DNA of 63,699 bases, counting the filler, from Octopus bimaculoides (Eukaryota): assembly GCF_001194135.2 (NCBI RefSeq). It is 6 parts of 6 records of this genome, joined end to end, with 100 filler letters (N's around TTAATTAATTAA, not from the genome) between each part and the next. Parts side by side here need not be neighbours in the genome. Positions count along the whole stretch, not along the records: positions 47,780 to 56,562 come from NC_068982.1; 5 more parts are not named here. One strand, written 5' to 3'. The first letter of the stretch is position 1. Each line of letters begins with the position of its first letter. The translations under genes and the position numbers were made by a program. Positions 12,546-56,562 of this stretch are shown one piece after another. The notes beneath the pieces were generated by a model that was not told the DNA's origin, ran no database searches, and saw nothing but the letters and a program-made list of their open reading frames with translations.

Positions 12546-13540
12546 TATATAAAATGTTTGTATATGTATGTATGTATGTATTATATATGTATGTATATGT
12601 ATGTGTACATGGGTGTGTGTTTTTGTGTCTCATTGTTGTGACGTTGCTCAATAATTGCAAATGTGTAATGTTCTTTGTTTCCAATTTTATGTGGGACCTT
12701 TTATTGCCATGGGACAACTGTACTATTTGATCCATGCATGTCAAATCACTTCTGATTTTATAAGGAGCAGGGCTAACTCTCTTAATTTCAAAAGGTGACT
12801 CACTGATCACTTAAATTCCTAAAAAAGATTATTTCAATTTAAAACCTAACTGGGAATATCTATAATAAAACAAATATTATAACACATGTTTTAAAAGCTC
12901 TAGTAAAAACCGGTTGCACAAAAATTCTTTCCACCATGGCTGTATTTATCCATTTGTTTTGTTTTTGTTTTGTTCTTTATTTTATATAATATAATTTTTA
13001 AGTTGAGAAGATATATTCTAATAATATTATAACTGAAAGAAGTTTTTCTGAAAACCGATGTTGTAGCACAAAACTCCATGGTTAGTTTCAGAAAGTCTAA
13101 TTTTTTGAATATCAGAGAAAATAAATCATAAAAATAGAGAAAGCTATTAACGGTGATATGGGAAGGAGATTCATCTTCAGACTTTGTAAGATGAAGCCAC
13201 AATTACATCACATAGACTGATTAAAGTAGATTTCAGTTAGAGAATCTTGAAGGTAAGGATATGGGAAGAAACCTTGGGAAGTTAGAAGATAATTTAAAAG
13301 TTTTAAGGTTTAATTGGAATACTATTTGAAGTGATGTATTTTAATGTTGACTGCAAGAAACTTGAAGCTCATGTAATGAGTTTGGAAATTAACATTTTTC
13401 AAAGTTTCTTTTTTCCTTGCAAAATTTCAACTTCATAAATGTAATGTTTTTTCCTGTATTGCAAGAGAAAGAAGACTAGAGAAAGGTTTCGAAAGTAGAT
13501 TTAAAAATGGAAATCATTCAAATATAAATGAATTGCAATG

Positions 13541-13575
<35 letters not shown>

Positions 13576-13607
13576 AATAATGATAAGGATAATAATAATT
13601 AAAATAT

Positions 13608-13785
13608 AATCTTCCAAGGTGACTCGTTTTCTCCGTTTCAATTTGTAAATGCACTAATACCCATAACAATGAGACATAGAAAAGTTAAGATGGGTTACCG
13701 ATGTGGGAAGGAAGGCCCATCATTAAACCATCTTCTGTTTATGGATGACATGAAATTGTTTGGGAAATCTGAAAAACAAATTTTT
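13608..13785 (+). mobile_element. Dong/R4-like LINE reverse transcriptase fragment
   Basis: Translates as IFQGDSFSPFQFVNALIP...GYRCGKEGPSLNHLLFMDDMKLFGKSEKQI, containing the QGD-SP and FMDD RT motifs. Confidence 0.8.
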
Positions 13786-47779: not shown

Positions 47780-47853
47780 GAAACAGAGGAAAATAGAGAG
47801 AAACAGAGGAAAATAGAGAGAAACAGAGGAAAATAGAGAGAAACAGAGGAAAA
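47780..47853. repeat. 20-bp minisatellite (GAAACAGAGGAAAATAGAGA) x about 3.7
   Basis: Direct reading of the sequence. Confidence 0.9.
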
Positions 47854-47926
47854 GAGAAAGAGCGACACAGACAGACTACTAATTATATTAAAAGATAATT
47901 CAACAGGTAAAAAAGAAAATTCATAC

Positions 47927-48010
47927 TCTTCGGAATCTTTTCACATCGTTGGAGAATCACGTGACCAATAGTACCCCCGAATCCAAAACAATTGATACCA
48001 ATTTTTCCAC
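47927..48010 (-). CDS. Ketosynthase C-terminal exon: (S)GKIGINCFGFGGTIGHVILQRCEKIPK
   Basis: Acceptor ttttgtattacag|GT and donor AAGA|gtatga; 84 nt, phase 1 to 1. Matches the KS C-terminal signature GNVGINSFGFGGSNVHIIL of FASN. Confidence 0.9.
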
Positions 48011-48623
48011 CTGTAATACAAAACGGTGCCAAAGTTAAGTATTTGGATGCGAGAGTGAAGAAAGCAAGTTGTAAGCAATCCGGCGTTTTCCTGAATAAAT
48101 TAACGATTCAAATGAGACTTATTTAATGGTCAAATTTTTCATACAGTATTTCTAATTAACTCGGATGAAAGATCTTATTCTGTTTTAGGATATTAAGGAC
48201 ATCAAAGACAAAATGGCACCCAGTTCTAACAACTGGTAAAATTTTACTATTTACCCGCCTCACAAAACGGGTGTAATCTCCCACTGGTGGACTTTCTGGC
48301 TTCCTCCTGTGAAACAAAATTTTGTCCAAACTATTTTTGTTTTCATTTGCTCCCACCGCCATTTCGTGCCTTTTTCCGTTGAATCTTTTCCATAAGTATT
48401 TCCATGGTCGTTGTTCTGATGATCTTTCTGGTTAAATATAATCCAGTTCTATATTTAAGAGATGAGGAATTATGTACATTATTTACATTTGACGGATAAT
48501 TGTCCTCATCTTGTTTGTTGTTAACAAGATGAGGACAAGCAGTGACCTGAATATAATAACAATAATAATAATAGTATTGTCAGATACTTTAGGAATGAGA
48601 ACCCAGGTTTGAAATTTCCTCAA

Positions 48624-48669
48624 GACACTTGATGAAGGCTGGCGGGTATATCAGCCGAAACGTTGTGTT
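48624..48669 (+). ncRNA. Minimal type I hammerhead-like motif (Penelope-type), with C3 changed to U
   Basis: gacac-TTGATGA-a-ggctg(loop)cagcc-GAAA-cgtt-gtgtt. Confidence 0.5.
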
Positions 48670-48984
48670 AACAAACAAGATGAGGACAAATATCCGTCAA
48701 ATGTAAATAATGTAAATATAATGTTAAGACCTTTAAACGTATCGCTAGCTTCAGTTTCTCGGTACATCGCTTCTCTGTTGAGTTGCTTCTTAGCCGTAAG
48801 TCTTTTTACTCCAATAGCTCTTTTCCTCGAACCGCTGCTATCAGGAACTCACTACTATCATCTTGTTTTCCTCTGGTCTCTGATATTCAGTCTTAAGCTT
48901 TCTGTCAATCGACAGATTTTAAAAAAATGTTGGCCCCTTCGTTTCCTTTTTTTTTTTGTAGTCCCTTATGTCACGGCAGCCTCA

Positions 48985-49260
48985 ATCCTTGTTTGGAAAA
49001 CATTCGTAAGAAAGCGTGAAAGAGATCTTGGAAAATCTCGCTCCCACATTTGGAATTGAAAGCTATACCAACCCCCGATCTGAACGGCTTGGGTTTCGGG
49101 AGTCCACGACATTTCAACATTCTGGCAAACATCTTCAGAGATTTGTGAGGTGTAGATGTGGAGGTCTTCAAAGAGCGCCTGGGCAAGAACCTACATCGCG
49201 GCAAGAGGTACAAAGAAGAACAGTTTTGTCCAACTCACTGCTTCCCCAGGAAGAGTCCAG
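48985..49260 (+). mobile_element. CR1-like LINE 3' fragment
   Basis: ILENLAPTFGIESYTN...SPRHFNILANIFRDL*GVDVEVFKERL...SNSLLPQ matches the recalled C-terminus GPRLFNILP...FKxxLDxxL...SNSLL. Frameshifted. Confidence 0.7.
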
Positions 49261-50044
49261 AAAAGAAAACAAACCACACTGAAGAGAGATGCTCCAGAAG
49301 ACGATAGAAAATATTGCATTCGTCTCAAGACGGTTGTAATTGTAATAAACGTACCCAATAACTTCTTAGCTTACATATTGTAGTTGATGAACAATAGTAT
49401 CGTTTGTGAGAGGTTGTCAATGGATCAATCACTGGGTTTCTGTATTTCTGTTAGTGAGAACGCCAGGGAGTGTTTGAAATTTTGTGCAGAACAAATATTG
49501 TAAGAGATTTTGTTTCGAAGATGCAGGTTTTTCGATTTCTCGTCAAAGTTTATATCTTATAAGAGGAACTCTATAATACACATGAAGGGCTTTTGCAGTT
49601 TCCTTCTACCAGACTATCGATCAACTCAGGGCCACGGTAGAAGGCACTTTCTCAAGAAGTCATTCAATGGAATTGAACTCAGAACTACGTGATTGCGAAA
49701 TGAATTTAACCACGGAGCCGTAGCAGTGCGCAGGGTAACTGGTAGCTGGGTGGGAGGAATTTCTACCCCTAAATAACTGGCTTTAATTGTTGCGTTCTCT
49801 CTGGAAAAGCTGTGTTTTAATTAAATGGTAATAAATGGCCCATTCTGAATACAAACATTAATTGATGCCCTTCTGCTCATCCTTTCTCTATAAGAGAGAA
49901 AAGAAAACAACAACAACAACGAAGGAGCAAAGAAATCTGTCAAACATTATATGAAAGTAATTAGCATTACGTAAGCAGCTGGAAAAAATATGTAAATGCA
50001 TTTAGTTATGGAAGTTCACCACGGTTTATCCATGTAAAAAAACG

Positions 50045-50407
50045 TCGTCGTGGCACTCCATCGGTTACGACGACGAAGGTTCCAGTTGATCCGATCATCG
50101 GAACAGCCGGCTCGTGAAATTAACGTGCAAGTGGCTGAGCACTCCAGACACGTGTGTCCTTAGCGTAGTTCTCGGGGAGATTCAGCGTGACAAGGCTGGC
50201 CCTTTGAAATACAGGTACGACAGAAACAAGAAGAGAGAAAGCTGAAGTGAAAGAGTACAGCAGGGTTCATCACCACTCCCTGCCGGAGCCTCGTGGGGCT
50301 TTAGGTGTTTTCGCTCCATAAACACTCACAACGGCCGGTCTGGGAATCGAAACTACGATCTTATGACCGCGAGTCCGCTGCCCTAACCAATGGGCCATTG
50401 CGCCTCC
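50045..50407 (-). mobile_element. tRNA-headed SINE (family D)
   Basis: Minus-strand head ggaggcgcaatggcccattggttagggcagcggactcgcggtc...tttcgattcccagacc with A- and B-box-like motifs. Confidence 0.75.
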
Positions 50408-52349
50408 NNNNNNNNNNNNNNNNNNNNNNNNNNNNNNNNNNNNNNNNNNNNNNNNNNNNNNNNNNNNNNNNNNNNNNNNNNNNNNNNNNNNNNNNNNNNN
50501 NNNNNNNNNNNNNNNNNNNNNNNNNNNNNNNNNNNNNNNNNNNNNNNNNNNNNNNNNNNNNNNNNNNNNNNNNNNNNNNNNNNNNNNNNNNNNNNNNNAT
50601 ACACATACATACATACATACATACATACACATACGATTGGAACATTTTTTTAATCATTGGCCAATTCAGTTAAGAACCACTTGGAGCTGAACAATGTAAT
50701 CCCCTCTTCTCGAAGACAAAAGGTTCACACGTTCTCGACGCGGATTCAGTCAGATATTTTCTGTGGATATTAGGCTGAAACAATTTTTGTCTCGAAAAAT
50801 TATAAACCCCTGCTAATCGTCCGTTGCCCTCAACAGTGCTAGACTACCAAATCCCACCTAATCGTACATTACCGTCAAAAATCCCAGATTACCAAATCCT
50901 CAGTGAAAGACTGGAGGGAGACATCGGGACCGGAAGCAAGGAGAAGTGACGTCAAGAAGCGAAGCATTTGAACAGTTTCTTCAATCGAGGGGAACAGTCG
51001 TGTGGAAAGGATTTCCGAGGGAGTGTAGTTTCTAGTCAGAGGTTGTCGTAGTATACACGTGTAGGCACGACCGACAAGGTCTGCTTGTCCTTGTGAAGCA
51101 GAAGCTGGATACACTGTTCTGATTTCGTCTCGCGCTATGAGCGTCTTTCCTTTTGCCTTTCCTTCTACGTTCCCCTAATCTGTCCCTTGCTCTCAACCAT
51201 ACCAGATTACCAAGACCTCACGCCCTTATTTGTCTTCAATAATCCCTTGTTTGGATGAGAAGACTTCGTACTACAGACATGAAATAAAAAGCGCACAGAG
51301 ACAGCTATCCGCTCGTAGTTTGTCAGTGATAATTCTCATATCGATTAAAAACATTCTTTTTAGTTTTATGGAGCCACAACAGCTGGCGGTGAAAGCAATA
51401 AACTAAAGCCGAATACTTTATTTGTTTAATCACAATCGCCCCGGGAAATGAAAGTTAGGTTTTTGTAGACTAAGCTAGGCAAAGGTCAGCTTCAACTGAA
51501 TTGAATTAAGTTTCACAACGTAAGGCAAATCTTTCTGCAGATCTAAGAATTATAAATAAATACGTAGTCAGTTAATTCACAAAAGATGTTGGTAGCCGAA
51601 GAAACTGGTGATCATAAGACCGTTTTCGCAGTATTATAAGCCTTTGGGTAAAACAATACACTGGGGGGGCCTATAGTATTTATTATGTATATGTGTTGTA
51701 GATAGAAAGCTACAGCGTATATACATAAGAATTAGGCTCCTCAGTCCGTGGGGACTCCACTGCACTGGAGCTTATAGTATTTATTGGTAATGGAATATAA
51801 GATCGATGAAAATAAACATTTATTTTGGTGCCGTTCTCTCATCTGCTGTTGAAATTAAATAATTACCACCATCAGACAAAATATCATGTGGAATTTACTC
51901 CATTACTTTTCTCAGCTAAAATCTACCCGGAATGGTTTAGTTTTAAAATATCTACCTATGTATCATAGTTAAAGTATATACACCATTGGAAAGCATAGAA
52001 CTGTGGTTTTCGCCCGAGAAAAAAATCTCTTCATAGATATACTGTGTTAAAAATATTAGAACGCGGCTAACATCGTCCAAGCAGTGAATCACAAGAGGGG
52101 CCGGACGCGTTTCGGCCTACTTGGACCAGAGGGGCGAATCATTCAGTTACTATGACTATCAAATCGTCATTGTCTCAGACCATCGACAGCTGTTTCTTCG
52201 CTATCGATTGACATAATTTCCTGTCTTCAAGACAAAAGTAATCGATAAATATCTAACAGCTAATCAATTATAAACAGCTGATTATAAATCAGTTGTCTCC
52301 AACAGAATTATAAAACAAAAACGTAAAAGAGGTTTCGAGTTTCACTTAC

Positions 52350-52493
52350 TTGGTAATTTGGTCGGTTCCGTTACAATCTTTAACTGATGCTTCATTATTT
52401 CAGCAATTTCTGGAATTGGTTGGTTGTAGCAGACATTTGGAGGAATTATACTATGTTGTATGGACATCACACATTTCAGCAAACTCACCAAAC
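52350..52493 (-). CDS. Ketosynthase exon: (G)LVSLLKCVMSIQHSIIPPNVCYNQPIPEIAEIMKHQLKIVTEPTKLP(S)
   Basis: Acceptor tttcttggttccgtttaag|GT and donor CCAA|gtaagt; 144 nt, phase 1 to 1. Matches FASN [46 protein letters not shown]. Absent from the ORF track and found by manual translation. Confidence 0.9.
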
Positions 52494-52749
52494 CTTAAAC
52501 GGAACCAAGAAATTACTTATGAAGAATAGCAAGCCACTAGGCCAAGCTACAGGTTGTTCAAAAGGCTCCTCATTGCAAAATAAATATTTATAAGATGGTA
52601 TAAGACTACAAAAGAATATATTAGACTTTACAAGACTTTAAATAACTTTATAAGAGGTGTTGAAAGTATCGTACTTCGCTTTGAATACATAAGTTGACTC
52701 TTCAACACAGGTTTTGAAATACATTTTGGAGAGTCTGATGCATCTTGGA

Positions 52750-53040
52750 GAGTCTGACGCGGTATGGACCGTGTGAAGGTTATGATTGCATCTTTTAGCT
52801 CATTAATGGTTTTCGAGCGATTCTTGTACACTGATCCTTTACTTGCTCCCCAGGAAAAAAAGTCTGGCGGTGTTAAATCAGGTGATCTTGGTGGCCAAAG
52901 TCCCTTCGAAATAATCCGTTCACCAAGAAACTCTTGAAGTAGCGCCATGGTGATGCATGAAATATGTGCTGTAGCTCCATCTTGCTGAAAGTATGTATTA
53001 CTAATTTCACATTCAGTGAGTTGGCCTAGAAATGGAGAGA
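52750..53040 (-). mobile_element. Tc1/mariner transposase fragment (rosa/DD41D-like motifs) in an intron of the KS gene
   Basis: YFQQDGATAH...WPPRSPDLTPPDFFSWG...VYKN...TINELKDAI. No TIRs recognised. Confidence 0.85.
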
Positions 53041-53175
53041 GACAATATTTGAGCAATCTGCGGAGAGACTTTTTGAACACTTTCTGCAAATTTATTGAGT
53101 CCATTTAATTTGCCCATAAACGCCGGGTTCTCAGAGAAATTCATTGGGTTCCCTCGCCCCCATTTATTTTAATCC

Positions 53176-53548
53176 TACTCAGTGTTACCTACTTGTTTTA
53201 GTCAGAATGCGGCCATGCTGGAGCACAGCCTTTAATAATTTAAGCCAAACGAATCGACCTCAGTACTTTTTTCCATTTAAGCCTCGTACTTATTCTATCA
53301 GTTACTTTTGCCGAATCGCTAAGTTACAGGGACCTAAACGTAACAGCACAGGTTGTCAAGCGGTAGTGTAGAACAAATACTGACACACACACACACACAC
53401 ACACACACATTTGTTTCCGCCTACCAAATCCACTCACAAAGCTTTGGTCAATCCGAGGTGAAAGACACTTAACCAAGGTGCCGTACAATGGGACCGAACC
53501 TAAAACCATGTTGTTGGGTAGCGAACTTCTTACCACACAGCCACCTCC
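53176..53548 (-). mobile_element. SINE family A copy
   Basis: gcggccatgctggagcac...ccaaatccactcacaaagctttgg...cttcttaccacacagcc. Confidence 0.8.
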
Positions 53549-53818
53549 GCAGTGTAAATCATGTAAATTAATAGGAAAAATGTTTTAAATCAATGTTTTG
53601 CGATTGTTTTTCTTTGTTTTTGTAACTTTATTTCTTCCCCTACAACTTGTTTATAGTTTTTGAAATTTGAATAGATTTTACTTCATTTCAAACGCATGAC
53701 GAAGAAGCGCCAAGTACAAAACAGAAAAGAACACAACAACAAGAACACCGATTCATCTGAGAACCAAATATATTGGAAGCGTGGACGAGAATTTTTGAAA
53801 GTCGGAACGTCATCTCAC

Positions 53819-53933
53819 CTGAACAAGCTTCTGTGTGTCCAAGATTACTTTTGCAAGAACCAACAAGTAAAGGCGACGTTCGGTTTTTGCAGAATACCTC
53901 AGCGAGTGCAGAGACTTCCATTGCATCATTGAC
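53819..53933 (-). CDS. Ketosynthase exon: VNDAMEVSALAEVFCKNRTSPLLVGSCKSNLGHTEACS(G)
   Basis: Long polypyrimidine tract ttttttctttttgttag|GTC and donor TCAG|gtgaga; 115 nt, phase 0 to 1. Matches FASN [39 protein letters not shown], including the KSNxGH motif. Confidence 0.93.
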
Positions 53934-53998
53934 CTAACAAAAAGAAAAAAGAAAAAAGTCTCCATTGACCTTGAAAATAAAAAGTAAATAAGTGCAGG

Positions 53999-54165
53999 AG
54001 TGGCTGTGTGGCAAGAAGTTTGCTTCCCAACAACATGGTTCCGGGTTCAGTCCCACTGCGTGGAACCTTGGGCAAGTGCCTTCTATAACCTCGGGCCAAC
54101 CAAAGCATTGTGCGTAAATTTGGTTGACGGAAACTGAAAGAAGCCCGTCGTTTGTGTATAGATGT
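53999..54165 (+). mobile_element. SINE family A 5' half
   Basis: ggctgtgtggcaagaagtttgcttccc...gacggaaactgaaagaagcccgtcg. Confidence 0.8.
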
Positions 54166-54271
54166 GTGTGTGTCTAATATATATGCGCGTGCGTGCGTGC
54201 GTGCGTGCGTAATATATATGTATGCATATATATGTATGTGTAATTTATATATTATATAATTGTACCATTGT

Positions 54272-56035
54272 GAAGGCGCATGGCTCAGTGGTTAGAGCGT
54301 CGAGCTAACGATTGTGAGGTCGTGAGTTCCAATCCCGGACCGTGCCGCGTGTTGTGTTCTTGAGCAAGACACTTTATTTCACATTGCTCCAGTTCACTCA
54401 TCTGTAGAAATGAGTTGCGACGTCACAAGTGCCAGGCTGTATCAGCCTTTGCCTTTCCTTTGGATAACACTGGTGGCGTCGAATTCGGCTTTGCCTTTCA
54501 TCCTTTCGGGGGCGTCGATTAAATAAGTACCAGTTATACACTGCGATTGATGTAATCGACTTAAATCCCTCAAATTTGAGGCCTTGTGCTTCCAGTAGAA
54601 ATGATTATCATTATCATGATGATAATAATAATAATAATAATTATTATTATTATTAGGGCGGTGAGCTGACAGAATCGTTTGCACGCCGGACGAAATGCTT
54701 AGCGATATTCCGTCAGTCGCTATATTCTGAGTTCAAATTCCGCCGAGGTCGACTTTGCCTGTCACCCTTCCGGGGTCGATAAATTAGGTACCAGTGAAAA
54801 ACTGGAGTCAATATAATTGATTTACCCCTTCCCTCCAAATTTAAGGTTTTGTGTCTATAGTAGAAAGCATTATCATCATTATCATGGCCGACAGCGGAAT
54901 CGATAGAATGCCAAGTAAAAGTGCCTTGCGGTGTTTGGTTACAACTGATTACTATTCAGTATTGAAAGCCATTCATTACATCATAGATATATTTCTGCAG
55001 TCTGCTTCGCAATCAATAGCAAGCATGAATGTTTAATTACCTTGATTCCTGTACCATCTGCTTCCACGTATACAACATCTTCTCCATTATACAGTTCACT
55101 CAGCAACTTAATTTGCGATTCTTCACTCGCATAATGAACACCTGCTTCAAAAGACAACGGAAAGAAAAAAAACACACGATTGAAAGCGCTGAATAATTAC
55201 TTTTATGTGACATCATTAATAACGCCTTTTATAAAATAAGAGATAAATAATTAAGTAAATTCTAAATTCATTGAAATTACATGTAGAAAATTTATAATTT
55301 ATGTTTTATTTTTTGTTTGATTTAGTCATTAAGCCGCAGCCATGGTGGAGCACCGCCTTGAAACGCTAAGTTACAGGGATTGAAGCGGTGATAGTGGGAC
55401 ACATTGTATTGTCCTTTATTTTGTCTCTTATGTTATTGTCTTTTAATGTGATTTTGTGAGCAGTTGGTGGCGAGCTGGCAGAACCGTTAGCACACTGGGC
55501 GAAATACTTTGCAGTATTTCGTCCGTCTTTACATTCCGAGTTCAAATTCCTTTCATCCTTTCGGGGTCGATAAATTAAGTACCAGTGCAACACTGGGGTT
55601 GATGTAATCGACTAGTCCCCTTCCCCCCACAATTTCAGGCCTTGTACCAATAGTAAAAAGGATTAATTATTATAATAAAGGCGGTGAGCTGGCAGAATCG
55701 TTAGCACGCCGGACAAAATGCTTAGCGGTATTTCGTCCGTCTTTACGTTCTGAGTTCAAATTCTGCCAAGGTCGACTTAATGTATAGACCTGGAAAGGGT
55801 GAAAGGTAAAGTACCAGTTGAGTACTGGGGTCGATGTAATCGGCTTCTTCCCCACCAAATTTCAAGCCTTGTGCCTATTGTAGGAAGGATTATTAATATC
55901 GTTGTTAAAGGCGGCGCGCTGATAGAATCCATGCCACAACAGACAAAATGCTTAACAGTGTTTCTTCTGGTTTACGTTTTCAGTTCAAATGGCGGCGAGA
56001 TCGACTGTCTTTCATTCATTTGGAGTTAATAAAAG
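54272..56035 (+). mobile_element. Cluster of same-orientation tRNA-derived SINEs: family C at 54272-54478; family B at about 54479, 54655, 55466, 55678 and 55907
   Basis: Repeated heads ggcggtgagctggcagaatcgttagcacgccgg and B-box gagttcaaattcc. The family C head ggctcagtggttagagcg is followed by a CORE-like tgttcttgagcaagacac. Confidence 0.85.
55041..55141 (-). CDS. Exon of a FAS/PKS-like ketosynthase domain: (G)VHYASEESQIKLLSELYNGEDVVYVEADGTGIK
   Basis: Acceptor tcttttgaagcag|GT and donor ATCAAG|gtaatt; 101 nt, phase 1 to 0. Aligns by eye to FASN GVTFPSGDIQEQLIRSLY...YIEAHGTGTK and splices in frame to the next exon. Confidence 0.9.
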
Positions 56036-56304
56036 AAGTGTCCGTTAAGCACGAGGGACGATATGATCCACTTATTCCTTACCTTAAAATTGTTGGCTTT
56101 CTGGTAAAATCTTACCCATTATTATTATCATCATCGCCAGATAATCTGATCATAGGTCTGCTCTGAACCGATTTGGGGTTAATCATCAACTCATTCGAAA
56201 TATTCTTTTTATCTCCAGGTTGACTATCGTCATGGAGGAAGAAAATGGTACTTCATTTTCACTGGTATTTCTAATCAAAGAAACCGAATCAGAGAGTAAA
56301 TAGA

Positions 56305-56562
56305 CACATGGTTCCGGGTTGAGCCCCACTGCACCTTGAGCAAATGTCTTTTGCTATTGCCTCGGACCGACCAAAGCCTTGAGAGTGGATTTGGTAGAAG
56401 GAAACTGAAAGAAGCCCACCGTGTGCGCGCGTGTGTATGTGCGCGTGCATGTAGTGCGTGTATATGTGCACGAGCGCGTGTTTTCCCCCACCCCACTCCG
56501 TTTGATGACTGGTATTGGTATGTTTACATCCCATCACTTGGCGTTTCGGCAAAACAAAAGTA
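56305..56562 (+). mobile_element. SINE family A copy truncated at a synthetic join
   Basis: cacatggttccgggttg...ggatttggtagaaggaaactgaaagaagccc... Confidence 0.7.

What the first reader, a model, noticed from the sequence alone, without database searches (positions are those of the whole stretch)
55041..55064. Catalytic His of EAHGTGT replaced by Asp (EADGTGI): candidate non-elongating KS0 in an animal
Seen: codon GAT at 55058-55056 gives E-A-D-G-T-G-I-K, one base from CAT, and the adjacent conserved Thr is Ile. The second His and the Lys of KSNxGH are kept. Established: KS catalysis uses a Cys-His-His triad (human FASN C161/H293/H331), and loss of the HGTGT His marks non-elongating KS0 domains in bacterial trans-AT PKS. 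Inference: this domain may pass or gate acyl chains without condensing them, or act as a structural or heterodimer partner (chain-length-factor-like). I am not aware of this being described for a cephalopod FAS-like protein, but I cannot search the literature.
Basis: partly seen in the sequence, partly recalled or inferred. Interest (0 to 1): 0.9.

Follow-up and report, generated by a model that had tools for sequence, protein, structure and literature searches.

The report
Octopus FAS-like ketosynthase lacking catalytic His
An octopus relative of fatty acid synthase really does carry Asp in place of a catalytic His in its chain-extending domain; the change is fixed in three Octopus species and kept by selection, but the protein has lost several other catalytic sites too, so it looks like a conserved non-enzyme copy rather than a specialised chain-passing domain.

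Summary
On the minus strand, codon GAT (55058-55056) gives E-A-D-G-T-G-I-K inside a well-spliced exon of a fatty-acid-synthase-like ketosynthase (KS) of Octopus bimaculoides. It is not an assembly error or a rare allele: O. sinensis and O. vulgaris have the identical GAT codon and the same loop (VEADGTGIKVNDAME). It is not a decaying duplicate either: dN/dS is about 0.2 for the KS (p about 1e-7). The gene matches the published mollusc "mo-clade 4" group of animal FAS-like PKSs, in which only KS, AT and TE are recognisable and the biochemistry is unknown. Other members of that group keep Cys-His-His, so the His loss is derived in octopods. The KS0 reading is only partly supported. The acyltransferase lacks its Ser, Arg and His, a trait shared by the family. 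No ACP or KR is detectable. The ER motif is gone. The thioesterase is cut off by a stop codon in O. vulgaris and O. sinensis. A more distant octopod has Gly at the KS nucleophile Cys while its exons stay under strong constraint (dN/dS 0.11). The most likely reading is a non-condensing KS fold kept for a non-catalytic role. Function was not tested. Moderately interesting.

The parts
55041..55141 (-). KS exon A: (G)VHYASEESQIKLLSELYNGEDVVYVEADGTGIK. AG acceptor at 55143-55142, GT donor at 55040-55039.
   Evidence: orthologous exon in O. sinensis L006 14839-14952 and O. vulgaris L007 16581-16814
55056..55058 (-). GAT = Asp at the position of the first catalytic His (human FASN His293). Same codon in three Octopus species.
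55044..55046 (-). ATC = Ile at the position of the second Thr of HGTGT
53819..53933 (-). KS exon B: VNDAMEVSALAEVFCKNRTSPLLVGSCKSNLGHTEACS(G). VGDP has become VNDA. Lys codon 53852-53850 and second His codon 53837-53835 are kept.
52350..52493 (-). KS exon C: (G)LVSLLKCVMSIQHSIIPPNVCYNQPIPEIAEIMKHQLKIVTEPTKLP
   Evidence: contains the PTKLP signature shared with the published clade 4 sequence
47927..48010 (-). KS exon D: (S)GKIGINCFGFGGTIGHVILQRCEKIPK. GFGG strand and end of the KS.
   Evidence: intact in O. vulgaris, disturbed in the O. sinensis assembly
55142..55186 (-). Intron sequence that NCBI model XP_052821873.1 reads through as AFNRVFFFFPLSFEA. This is an annotation patch: the true upstream exon lies in an assembly gap.
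50408..50598 (.). Assembly gap (N) inside the intron between exons C and D

Best explanation
The four exons encode the C-terminal half of the KS domain of an octopod member of the mollusc 'mo-clade 4' animal FAS-like PKS family. That family has a KS, a Ser-less acyltransferase, a long unrecognisable middle, an ER-like remnant and a thioesterase. In the octopod lineage the loop that binds and decarboxylates malonyl thioester has been rewritten (His->Asp, Thr->Ile, Gly->Asn, Pro->Ala). The domain most likely cannot perform decarboxylative Claisen condensation (inferred). The fold is kept, and the gene has been under purifying selection since before the split of O. bimaculoides from O. vulgaris (shown). 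The other catalytic sites are also missing, there is no carrier domain, and a related octopod has lost the KS Cys as well. I therefore infer that what selection keeps is a non-catalytic property of the KS fold and of the whole protein. Candidates are dimerisation or scaffolding, or binding of an acyl or other ligand, possibly together with a catalytically active relative. It is a pseudoenzyme rather than a working KS0 module.
For: Shown:
- Asp codon and loop are identical in three species.
- dN/dS for the window's KS exons is 0.20 (Fisher p 2e-4). For all available KS codons it is 0.19-0.21 (p 1e-7 to 2e-8). For the whole gene it is 0.21 (p 6e-20).
- The orthologue from an unidentified, more distant octopod gives dN/dS 0.11 (p 3e-12) and carries DTAGSSS, with TGT changed to GGA.
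- An AlphaFold model of the KS has pLDDT 84 and pTM 0.85. It superposes on human and mouse FAS KS at TM 0.81, rmsd 1.6 A over 406 columns.
- MAT Ser581->Gly, Arg606->Ile and His683->Asn, from the alignment to human FASN.
- Pfam finds only KS_N, KS_C and the KS-AT linker, with AT below the cut-off. There is no ACP, KR, DH or ER hit. TE is found in O. bimaculoides only.
- An in-frame TAA lies before the TE in O. vulgaris and O. sinensis.
- The KS is 45.6% identical to the published clade 4 KS, against 39.8% to human FAS.
- The protein is colinear with a full-length clade 4 protein whose AT also lacks the Ser.
Established: the HGTGT His is required for decarboxylative condensation, and its loss defines KS0 domains (PMC4661987).
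Against: No biochemical or expression data were available. Asp could in principle act as a general base, so loss of condensation is an inference. Octopus species keep Cys, Lys, the second His and the GFGG Phe, which would be consistent with a residual acyl-enzyme function. The Cys->Gly orthologue comes from short contigs of an unidentified sequencing run and might be a recent paralogue. The linker and AT region has dN/dS of about 0.6, not significantly below 1, so part of the protein is relaxed. Whether Octopus also has a canonical FASN could not be checked with the searches available.
Confidence: 0.6

Rival explanations
1. Working KS0: the KS is still acylated on its Cys and hands acyl chains on without elongating them. 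The recipient could be the C-terminal thioesterase or a partner enzyme, with substrates delivered in trans.
For: Cys, Lys, the second His and the oxyanion-hole Phe are kept in three Octopus species. The loop changes resemble bacterial KS0 domains. O. bimaculoides keeps a TE with GYSFGA, DGSP and GNH motifs in the same reading frame. Algal KS0 domains placed before hydrolase-like domains have been proposed to act in release (PMC4661987).
Against: There is no ACP, and no AT able to load one. The TE is cut off by a stop codon, and its core exon was not found, in O. sinensis and O. vulgaris, while the rest stays constrained. The KS Cys is Gly in another octopod that is under strong constraint.
Confidence: 0.2
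2. Still a condensing enzyme: Asp substitutes for His as the general base, and the KS extends chains with unusual substrates.
For: One proposed role of the first His is as a general base; the roles proposed for His293 are disputed in the literature (PMC11720392). The rest of the active site is kept.
Against: A carboxylate cannot donate the hydrogen bond that stabilises the enolate. Three further conserved loop residues are changed. There is no AT or ACP to supply an extender unit. The Cys is lost in a related species. Among 807 KS domains, Asp appears only here and in a wasp protein whose KS is otherwise wrecked.
Confidence: 0.1
3. Decaying duplicate (pseudogene) or sequencing or assembly error.
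For: NCBI models for O. bimaculoides are truncated and patchy. The O. sinensis copy of exon D carries a G/T-rich insert of about 110 nt and indels.
Against: The truncations coincide with N gaps in the assembly, and the missing exons are present in O. sinensis and O. vulgaris. The codon is identical in three assemblies. All four exons are open with canonical, phase-consistent splice sites. dN/dS is about 0.2, with highly significant excess of synonymous change.
Confidence: 0.04

Closest known systems
mo-clade 4 animal FAS-like PKSs (AFPKs) of molluscs (Lin et al. 2024, PMC10764717)
   Same: The KS is most similar to the published clade 4 sequence: 45.6% identity and 363 bits, against 39.8% and 288 bits to human FAS. 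It shares signatures such as PTKLPxG and QCLKIA. The protein is colinear over KS-linker-AT, the ER-like remnant and the TE. Only KS, a weak AT and TE are recognisable. The AT nucleophile Ser is absent here (GYGLAE) and also in the published representative (GQGIGS) and in Physella (GPGVGA). The paper reports the clade in Cephalopoda.
   Different: The published clade 4 sequences examined keep Cys-His-His (EAHSTGT, EAHGTST). The octopod proteins have Asp with a rewritten loop. They are about 1700 aa rather than 2900. The TE is lost behind a stop codon in two species.
KS0 (non-elongating ketosynthase) domains of trans-AT and other modular PKSs
   Same: The HGTGT His is lost, with accompanying changes in GTGT and GDP, while Asp and Glu of the loop and KSNxGH are kept (PMC4661987).
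   Different: KS0 domains sit between carrier domains in an assembly line and need their Cys. Here there is no carrier domain, the host is an animal, the replacing residue is Asp rather than Gln, Asn, Ala or Ser, and the Cys is dispensable in a related species.
Metazoan fatty acid synthase (FASN)
   Same: The domain order KS-linker-MAT is colinear with human FASN residues 3-852 (E 6e-104). The KS fold superposes at 1.6 A. The exon peptides align residue for residue.
   Different: KS identity is only about 40%, where true FAS orthologues are about 60% (human-beetle 61.6%). KS His293, MAT Ser581, Arg606 and His683 and the ER nucleotide motif are lost. No KR or ACP is found.
Chain-length factor (KS-beta) and KSQ domains
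   Same: These are KS folds kept without full catalytic equipment, working as partner or decarboxylase subunits.
   Different: CLF and KSQ lose the Cys (to Gln) and keep the His residues needed for decarboxylation. This domain does the reverse in Octopus.

Membership tests
Thiolase-fold beta-ketoacyl synthase (Pfam PF00109/PF02801) | Significant match to the KS N- and C-terminal domain models | tested here: met
   Window peptide: PF02801 at 91 bits and PF16197 at 47 bits. Full O. vulgaris orthologue: PF00109 at 154 bits and PF02801 at 87 bits.
Catalytically competent Cys-His-His condensing KS | Cys (DTACSSS), first His (HGTGT), Lys and second His (KSxxGH) all present | tested here: not met
   The first His is Asp in three species. 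Cys, Lys and the second His are present in Octopus. The Cys is Gly in another octopod.
KS0 non-elongating ketosynthase | HGTGT His lost with the Cys retained | tested here: met
   EADGTGI with DTACSSS in O. bimaculoides, O. sinensis and O. vulgaris.
KS0 non-elongating ketosynthase | Embedded between carrier protein domains so that a chain can be received and passed on | tested here: not met
   No PP-binding (ACP) hit in P0275 or P0279 at E <= 1.
KS0 non-elongating ketosynthase | Transacylation without condensation shown biochemically | not testable with these tools
   Needs an enzyme assay.
mo-clade 4 AFPK (Lin et al. 2024) | KS closer to clade 4 sequences than to FAS or other AFPK clades | tested here: met
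   Against the clade 4 representative: 363 bits, 45.6% identity. Against the human FAS KS: 288 bits. EcPKS1 and EcPKS2 score below FAS in the PDB search. These are pairwise scores only; no tree was built.
mo-clade 4 AFPK (Lin et al. 2024) | Only KS-AT-TE predictable, with the remainder lacking similarity to other proteins | tested here: met
   Pfam on P0275 and P0279. Colinear with the 2902-aa clade 4 representative.
mo-clade 4 AFPK (Lin et al. 2024) | Placement inside the clade in a phylogeny with the authors' data set | not tested
   The alignment files are only partly held. The pairwise evidence was judged sufficient for a provisional assignment.
Canonical metazoan FASN orthologue | Complete KS-MAT-DH-psiME-ER-KR-ACP-TE with catalytic residues and about 55-60% KS identity across phyla | tested here: not met
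   40% KS identity. MAT triad lost. No KR or ACP.

The most novel reading that the evidence does not exclude
Octopods maintain, under strong purifying selection, a large FAS-like protein in which almost every recognisable catalytic centre has been disabled; the thioesterase alone stays intact, in O. bimaculoides. The disabled centres are the KS His (and, in one lineage, the KS Cys), the AT triad and the ER cofactor site. No ACP or KR is present. The TE is dispensable in some species. This would be a megasynthase pseudoenzyme whose selected function is non-catalytic, for example pairing with and regulating an active FAS or AFPK through the KS dimer interface, or serving as a lipid-binding or structural protein.
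Probability: 0.5. Interest if true: 0.6.

Novelty: new variant of a known kind. Interest (0 to 1): 0.45.

Why it matters
Animal FAS-like PKSs were recognised only recently, and the mo-clade 4 branch, found in every mollusc class, has no known chemistry. This work shows that its acyltransferase lacks the nucleophile across the family. It also shows that octopods have disabled the ketosynthase yet keep the gene under constraint. That narrows what the proteins can be doing, and it gives a natural series for dissecting the family's function: intact Cys-His-His in the snail (Physella) and the published clade 4 sequences, His lost in Octopus, and Cys lost in another octopod. It also warns against counting such genes as biosynthetic capacity in genome mining. 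Finally, it shows that the fragmentary O. bimaculoides gene models are artefacts of assembly gaps.

Tried and rejected
1. The exhaustive representative search returned only multi-KS bacterial PKSs, because summed scores dominate the ranking. It was useless for finding animal relatives.
2. The word-indexed homologue searches did not list the orthologues directly. They were hidden as members of a cluster whose representative lacks the KS, and were recovered only through the listing of cluster members.
3. I first read the truncated NCBI models (missing N-terminus and a central exon) as evidence of gene decay. I rejected this once the N gaps were mapped and the exons were found in O. sinensis and O. 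vulgaris.
4. I considered that P0002/L001, which lacks both KS Cys and His, was a distant cephalopod orthologue. I rejected this because it is closest to wasp FAS-like proteins.
5. I tried to scan 10 kb downstream of the O. sinensis gene against Pfam by DNA reference.
6. A search for the run accessions in the literature, to name the unidentified octopod, found nothing.
7. Motif searches for EADGTG in the supplements of Lin et al. found nothing.
8. The intronic ORF at 52628-53104 gave no Pfam hit.
9. A-to-I RNA editing cannot restore His from GAT; editing the A would give Gly. This is an inference from the genetic code.

Full report
OBSERVATION. The finding lies on the minus strand. Reading 55064 to 55041 gives GAA GCA GAT GGT ACA GGA ATC AAG, that is E-A-D-G-T-G-I-K, followed by a GT donor. 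The piece (47780-56562) holds four exons with canonical AG/GT borders and consistent phases:
- A, 55141-55041
- B, 53933-53819
- C, 52493-52350
- D, 48010-47927

Spliced, they give GVHYASEESQIKLLSELYNGEDVVYVEADGTGIK | VNDAMEVSALAEVFCKNRTSPLLVGSCKSNLGHTEACSG | LVSLL...TKLP | SGKIGINCFGFGGTIGHVILQRCEKIPK. Pfam assigns this peptide to Ketoacyl-synt_C (E 7e-26) and to the KS C-terminal extension. The best solved-structure relatives by sequence are mammalian FAS (113 bits), ahead of the sea-slug AFPK EcPKS2 (100 bits). The alignment to human FASN puts the Asp at His293, and the Ile at the second Thr of HGTGT. VGDP has become VNDA, while Lys326, His331 and the GFGG strand are kept.

HOW UNUSUAL. His occupies this column 776 times. 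The alternatives are Gln (10), Asn (5) and Ala (4). Asp appears only in this Octopus gene and in a Polistes FAS-like protein whose KS is otherwise degenerate. The non-His domains are KS0-type domains of modular PKSs. They show the same pattern of accompanying changes in GTGT and GDP, with the loop's Asp and Glu retained.

SOURCE AND GENE MODEL. The piece is 100% identical to O. bimaculoides chromosome CM046602.1 (L004 17099-25881). It is bounded by assembly gaps. UniProt holds an 84-aa fragment. NCBI holds XP_052821873.1 (568 aa) and the older XP_014775589.1 (534 aa). These models lack the first 85 residues or so of the KS and a central stretch of about 45 residues. One of them reads through intron sequence (AFNRVFFFFPLSFEA; window 55186-55142). 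I first took this as decay, but L004 has runs of N exactly where the missing exons should be (13282-14682, 15222-15419, 16056-17098 and others).

ORTHOLOGUES. The cluster of the O. sinensis relative contains two useful members: XP_036356673.1 (O. sinensis, 413 aa, a complete KS) and CAI9716890.1 (O. vulgaris, 1401 aa). Both contain the exons missing from O. bimaculoides, and both read VYVEADGTGIKVNDAME. With their loci fetched (L006, L007), the codon is GAT in all three species. An assembly error or a rare allele is therefore excluded as far as assemblies can show.

SELECTION. Nei-Gojobori estimates on codons mapped through tblastn, with Fisher tests:

| Region and comparison | dS | dN | omega | p |
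|---|---|---|---|---|
| Window's KS exons, O. bimaculoides vs O. vulgaris | 0.19 | 0.037 | 0.20 | 2e-4 |
| All available KS codons | | | 0.19-0.21 | 1e-7 to 2e-8 |
| Linker plus AT | | | about 0.6 | not significant |
| Remainder of the gene | | | 0.12-0.16 | |
| Whole gene | | | 0.21 | 6e-20 |

Introns in the window are 77-90% identical to O. vulgaris. A Logan contig from an unidentified, more distant octopod (L008; exons 91-93% identical in protein, introns 75-79%) gives omega 0.11 over 159 codons (p 3e-12). The "decaying duplicate" rival is thus refuted for the period covered.

THE REST OF THE PROTEIN. The O. vulgaris protein aligns colinearly with human FASN from the KS to the start of the DH (E 6e-104). 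In that alignment:
- MAT GHSLGE is GYGLAE (Ser581 to Gly).
- AYWRG is AYLIG (Arg606 to Ile).
- AFHS is VYNT (His683 to Asn).
- The ER segment aligns weakly, and its HSGSGGVG is HPPYDVVY.

Pfam recognises only KS_N, KS_C and the linker. AT scores 18 bits, below the cut-off. No DH, ER, KR or ACP model matches. The O. bimaculoides gene is split into two NCBI models by another gap. The second (P0279, 1022 aa) continues into a thioesterase (78 bits) with GYSFGA, DGSP and GNH. In O. sinensis and O. vulgaris an in-frame TAA sits where O. bimaculoides has Glu (ADE*LLVMSPP). The TE core exon was not found in the 8 kb between that stop codon and the next recognisable TE exon in O. sinensis. In the unidentified octopod the KS nucleophile is Gly (DTAGSSS; TGT to GGA).

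STRUCTURE. An AlphaFold2 model of the O. vulgaris KS, built with a 32-sequence alignment, is confident (pLDDT 84, pTM 0.85). It superposes on human and mouse FAS KS (TM 0.81, rmsd 1.6 A over 406 columns, 40% identity). The fold is intact. Only the chemistry has changed.

WHAT IS KNOWN. Torres et al. 2020 noted that octopus has many FAS-type PKSs (PMC7280274). Lin et al. 2024 defined mollusc clade 4 AFPKs. In that clade only KS-AT-TE can be predicted, the remainder lacks similarity to anything, the biochemistry is called unknown, and the clade is reported in all mollusc classes including cephalopods (PMC10764717).

The Octopus KS is 45.6% identical (363 bits) to their clade 4 representative, against 39.8% (288 bits) to human FAS. 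True FAS orthologues are about 62% identical across phyla. The Octopus protein is colinear with their 2902-aa clade 4 protein over three regions: KS-linker-AT (33% over 624 aa), the ER-like remnant, and the TE (37% over 215 aa).

That protein and Physella P0162 also lack the AT serine (GQGIGS, GPGVGA). The dead AT is therefore a family trait. By contrast, their KS domains keep Cys-His-His (EAHGTST; the other representative has EAHSTGT). The His-to-Asp change is therefore derived in octopods. I found no paper describing it.

INTERPRETATION. The following is established knowledge: the HGTGT His is needed for decarboxylative condensation, and its loss defines KS0 domains (PMC4661987; the roles of His293 are discussed in PMC11720392). 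From this I infer that the domain does not condense.

A chain-passing KS0 needs three things: its Cys, a carrier domain, and something to pass chains to. Here there is no carrier domain, the AT cannot load one, the TE is dispensable in two species, and the Cys is dispensable in another. Constraint nevertheless stays strong. The best reading is a pseudoenzyme whose KS fold is kept for a non-catalytic role such as dimerisation, scaffolding or ligand binding (confidence about 0.6). The rivals are a residual acyl-transfer role (about 0.2), a still-condensing enzyme with Asp as base (about 0.1), and pseudogene or error (about 0.04). A-to-I editing cannot recreate His from GAU.

LIMITS. No reads, transcripts or assays were available. 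dN/dS comes from a simple counting method on tblastn-mapped codons. Clade assignment rests on pairwise scores, not a tree. The species behind L008 is unknown. Whether Octopus has a canonical FASN could not be determined, because the homologue searches were exhausted and biased towards short proteins.

VERDICT. The KS0 interpretation is partly supported. The gene belongs to a described but functionally unknown family, and represents a new, catalytically stripped variant of it. Interest is moderate (0.45).

Noticed in passing
L005 3950-4140 (O. sinensis, orthologue of window exon D 48010-47927): The O. sinensis assembly has a G/T-rich insert of about 110 nt plus small indels inside the last KS exon. 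NCBI splits the gene into two models there (413 aa and 919 aa). O. vulgaris has the exon intact, so this may be an unpolished assembly region rather than a real lesion.
   Followed up: partly
L005 46549-46551 and L007 68492-68494: O. sinensis and O. vulgaris share an in-frame TAA (ADE*LLVMSPP) where O. bimaculoides has Glu and reads on into a thioesterase with an intact Ser/Asp/His. The TE core exon was not found in the 8 kb between the stop codon and the next recognisable TE exon in O. sinensis.
   Followed up: partly
L008 1371-1532 and L009 989-1150 (Logan runs SRR11869390 and SRR11869391): An unidentified, more distant octopod has the orthologous exons at 91-93% protein identity, but with the KS active-site Cys replaced by Gly (DTAGSSS; TGT to GGA).
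   Followed up: partly
P0162 (Physella acuta) and the clade 4 representative SRR6832922 in Supplementary Data 11 of PMC10764717: The acyltransferase nucleophile Ser is missing across mo-clade 4 AFPKs (GPGVGA, GQGIGS, Octopus GYGLAE). I did not see this stated in the paper.
   Followed up: partly
L001 2540-3152 (Logan SRR24994258) and P0182 (Polistes fuscatus): Wasp-type FAS-like genes have a wrecked KS but an intact AT (GHSVGE). In L001 the Cys motif reads AGDVLGT and HGTGT reads SACGV. In Polistes they read QSECVGS and EADGTAV. This is an independent case of KS inactivation in an animal FAS paralogue.
   Followed up: partly
window 55142-55186 (-) and L004 gaps 13282-17098 and 36605-37592: NCBI models XP_052821873.1 and XP_014775589.1, and the split between LOC models P0153 and P0279, are artefacts of N gaps in the O. 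bimaculoides assembly. One model translates intron sequence to bridge a hidden exon.
   Followed up: yes
window 52628-53104 (-): A 158-aa intronic ORF has a motif (QQDGATAH...WPPRSPDLTPPDFF) that I recall from Tc1/mariner-type transposase C-termini. Pfam gave no hit at E 0.01. The introns also hold many copies of a short interspersed repeat that recurs dozens of times in the O. sinensis locus.
   Followed up: partly
P0279 residue about 137 versus P0275 residue about 848: At the position aligned by eye to the DH catalytic His (human DHTLDG), O. vulgaris has ITGHF and O. bimaculoides has ITGYF. Neither has the HxxxGxxxxP motif.
   Followed up: no
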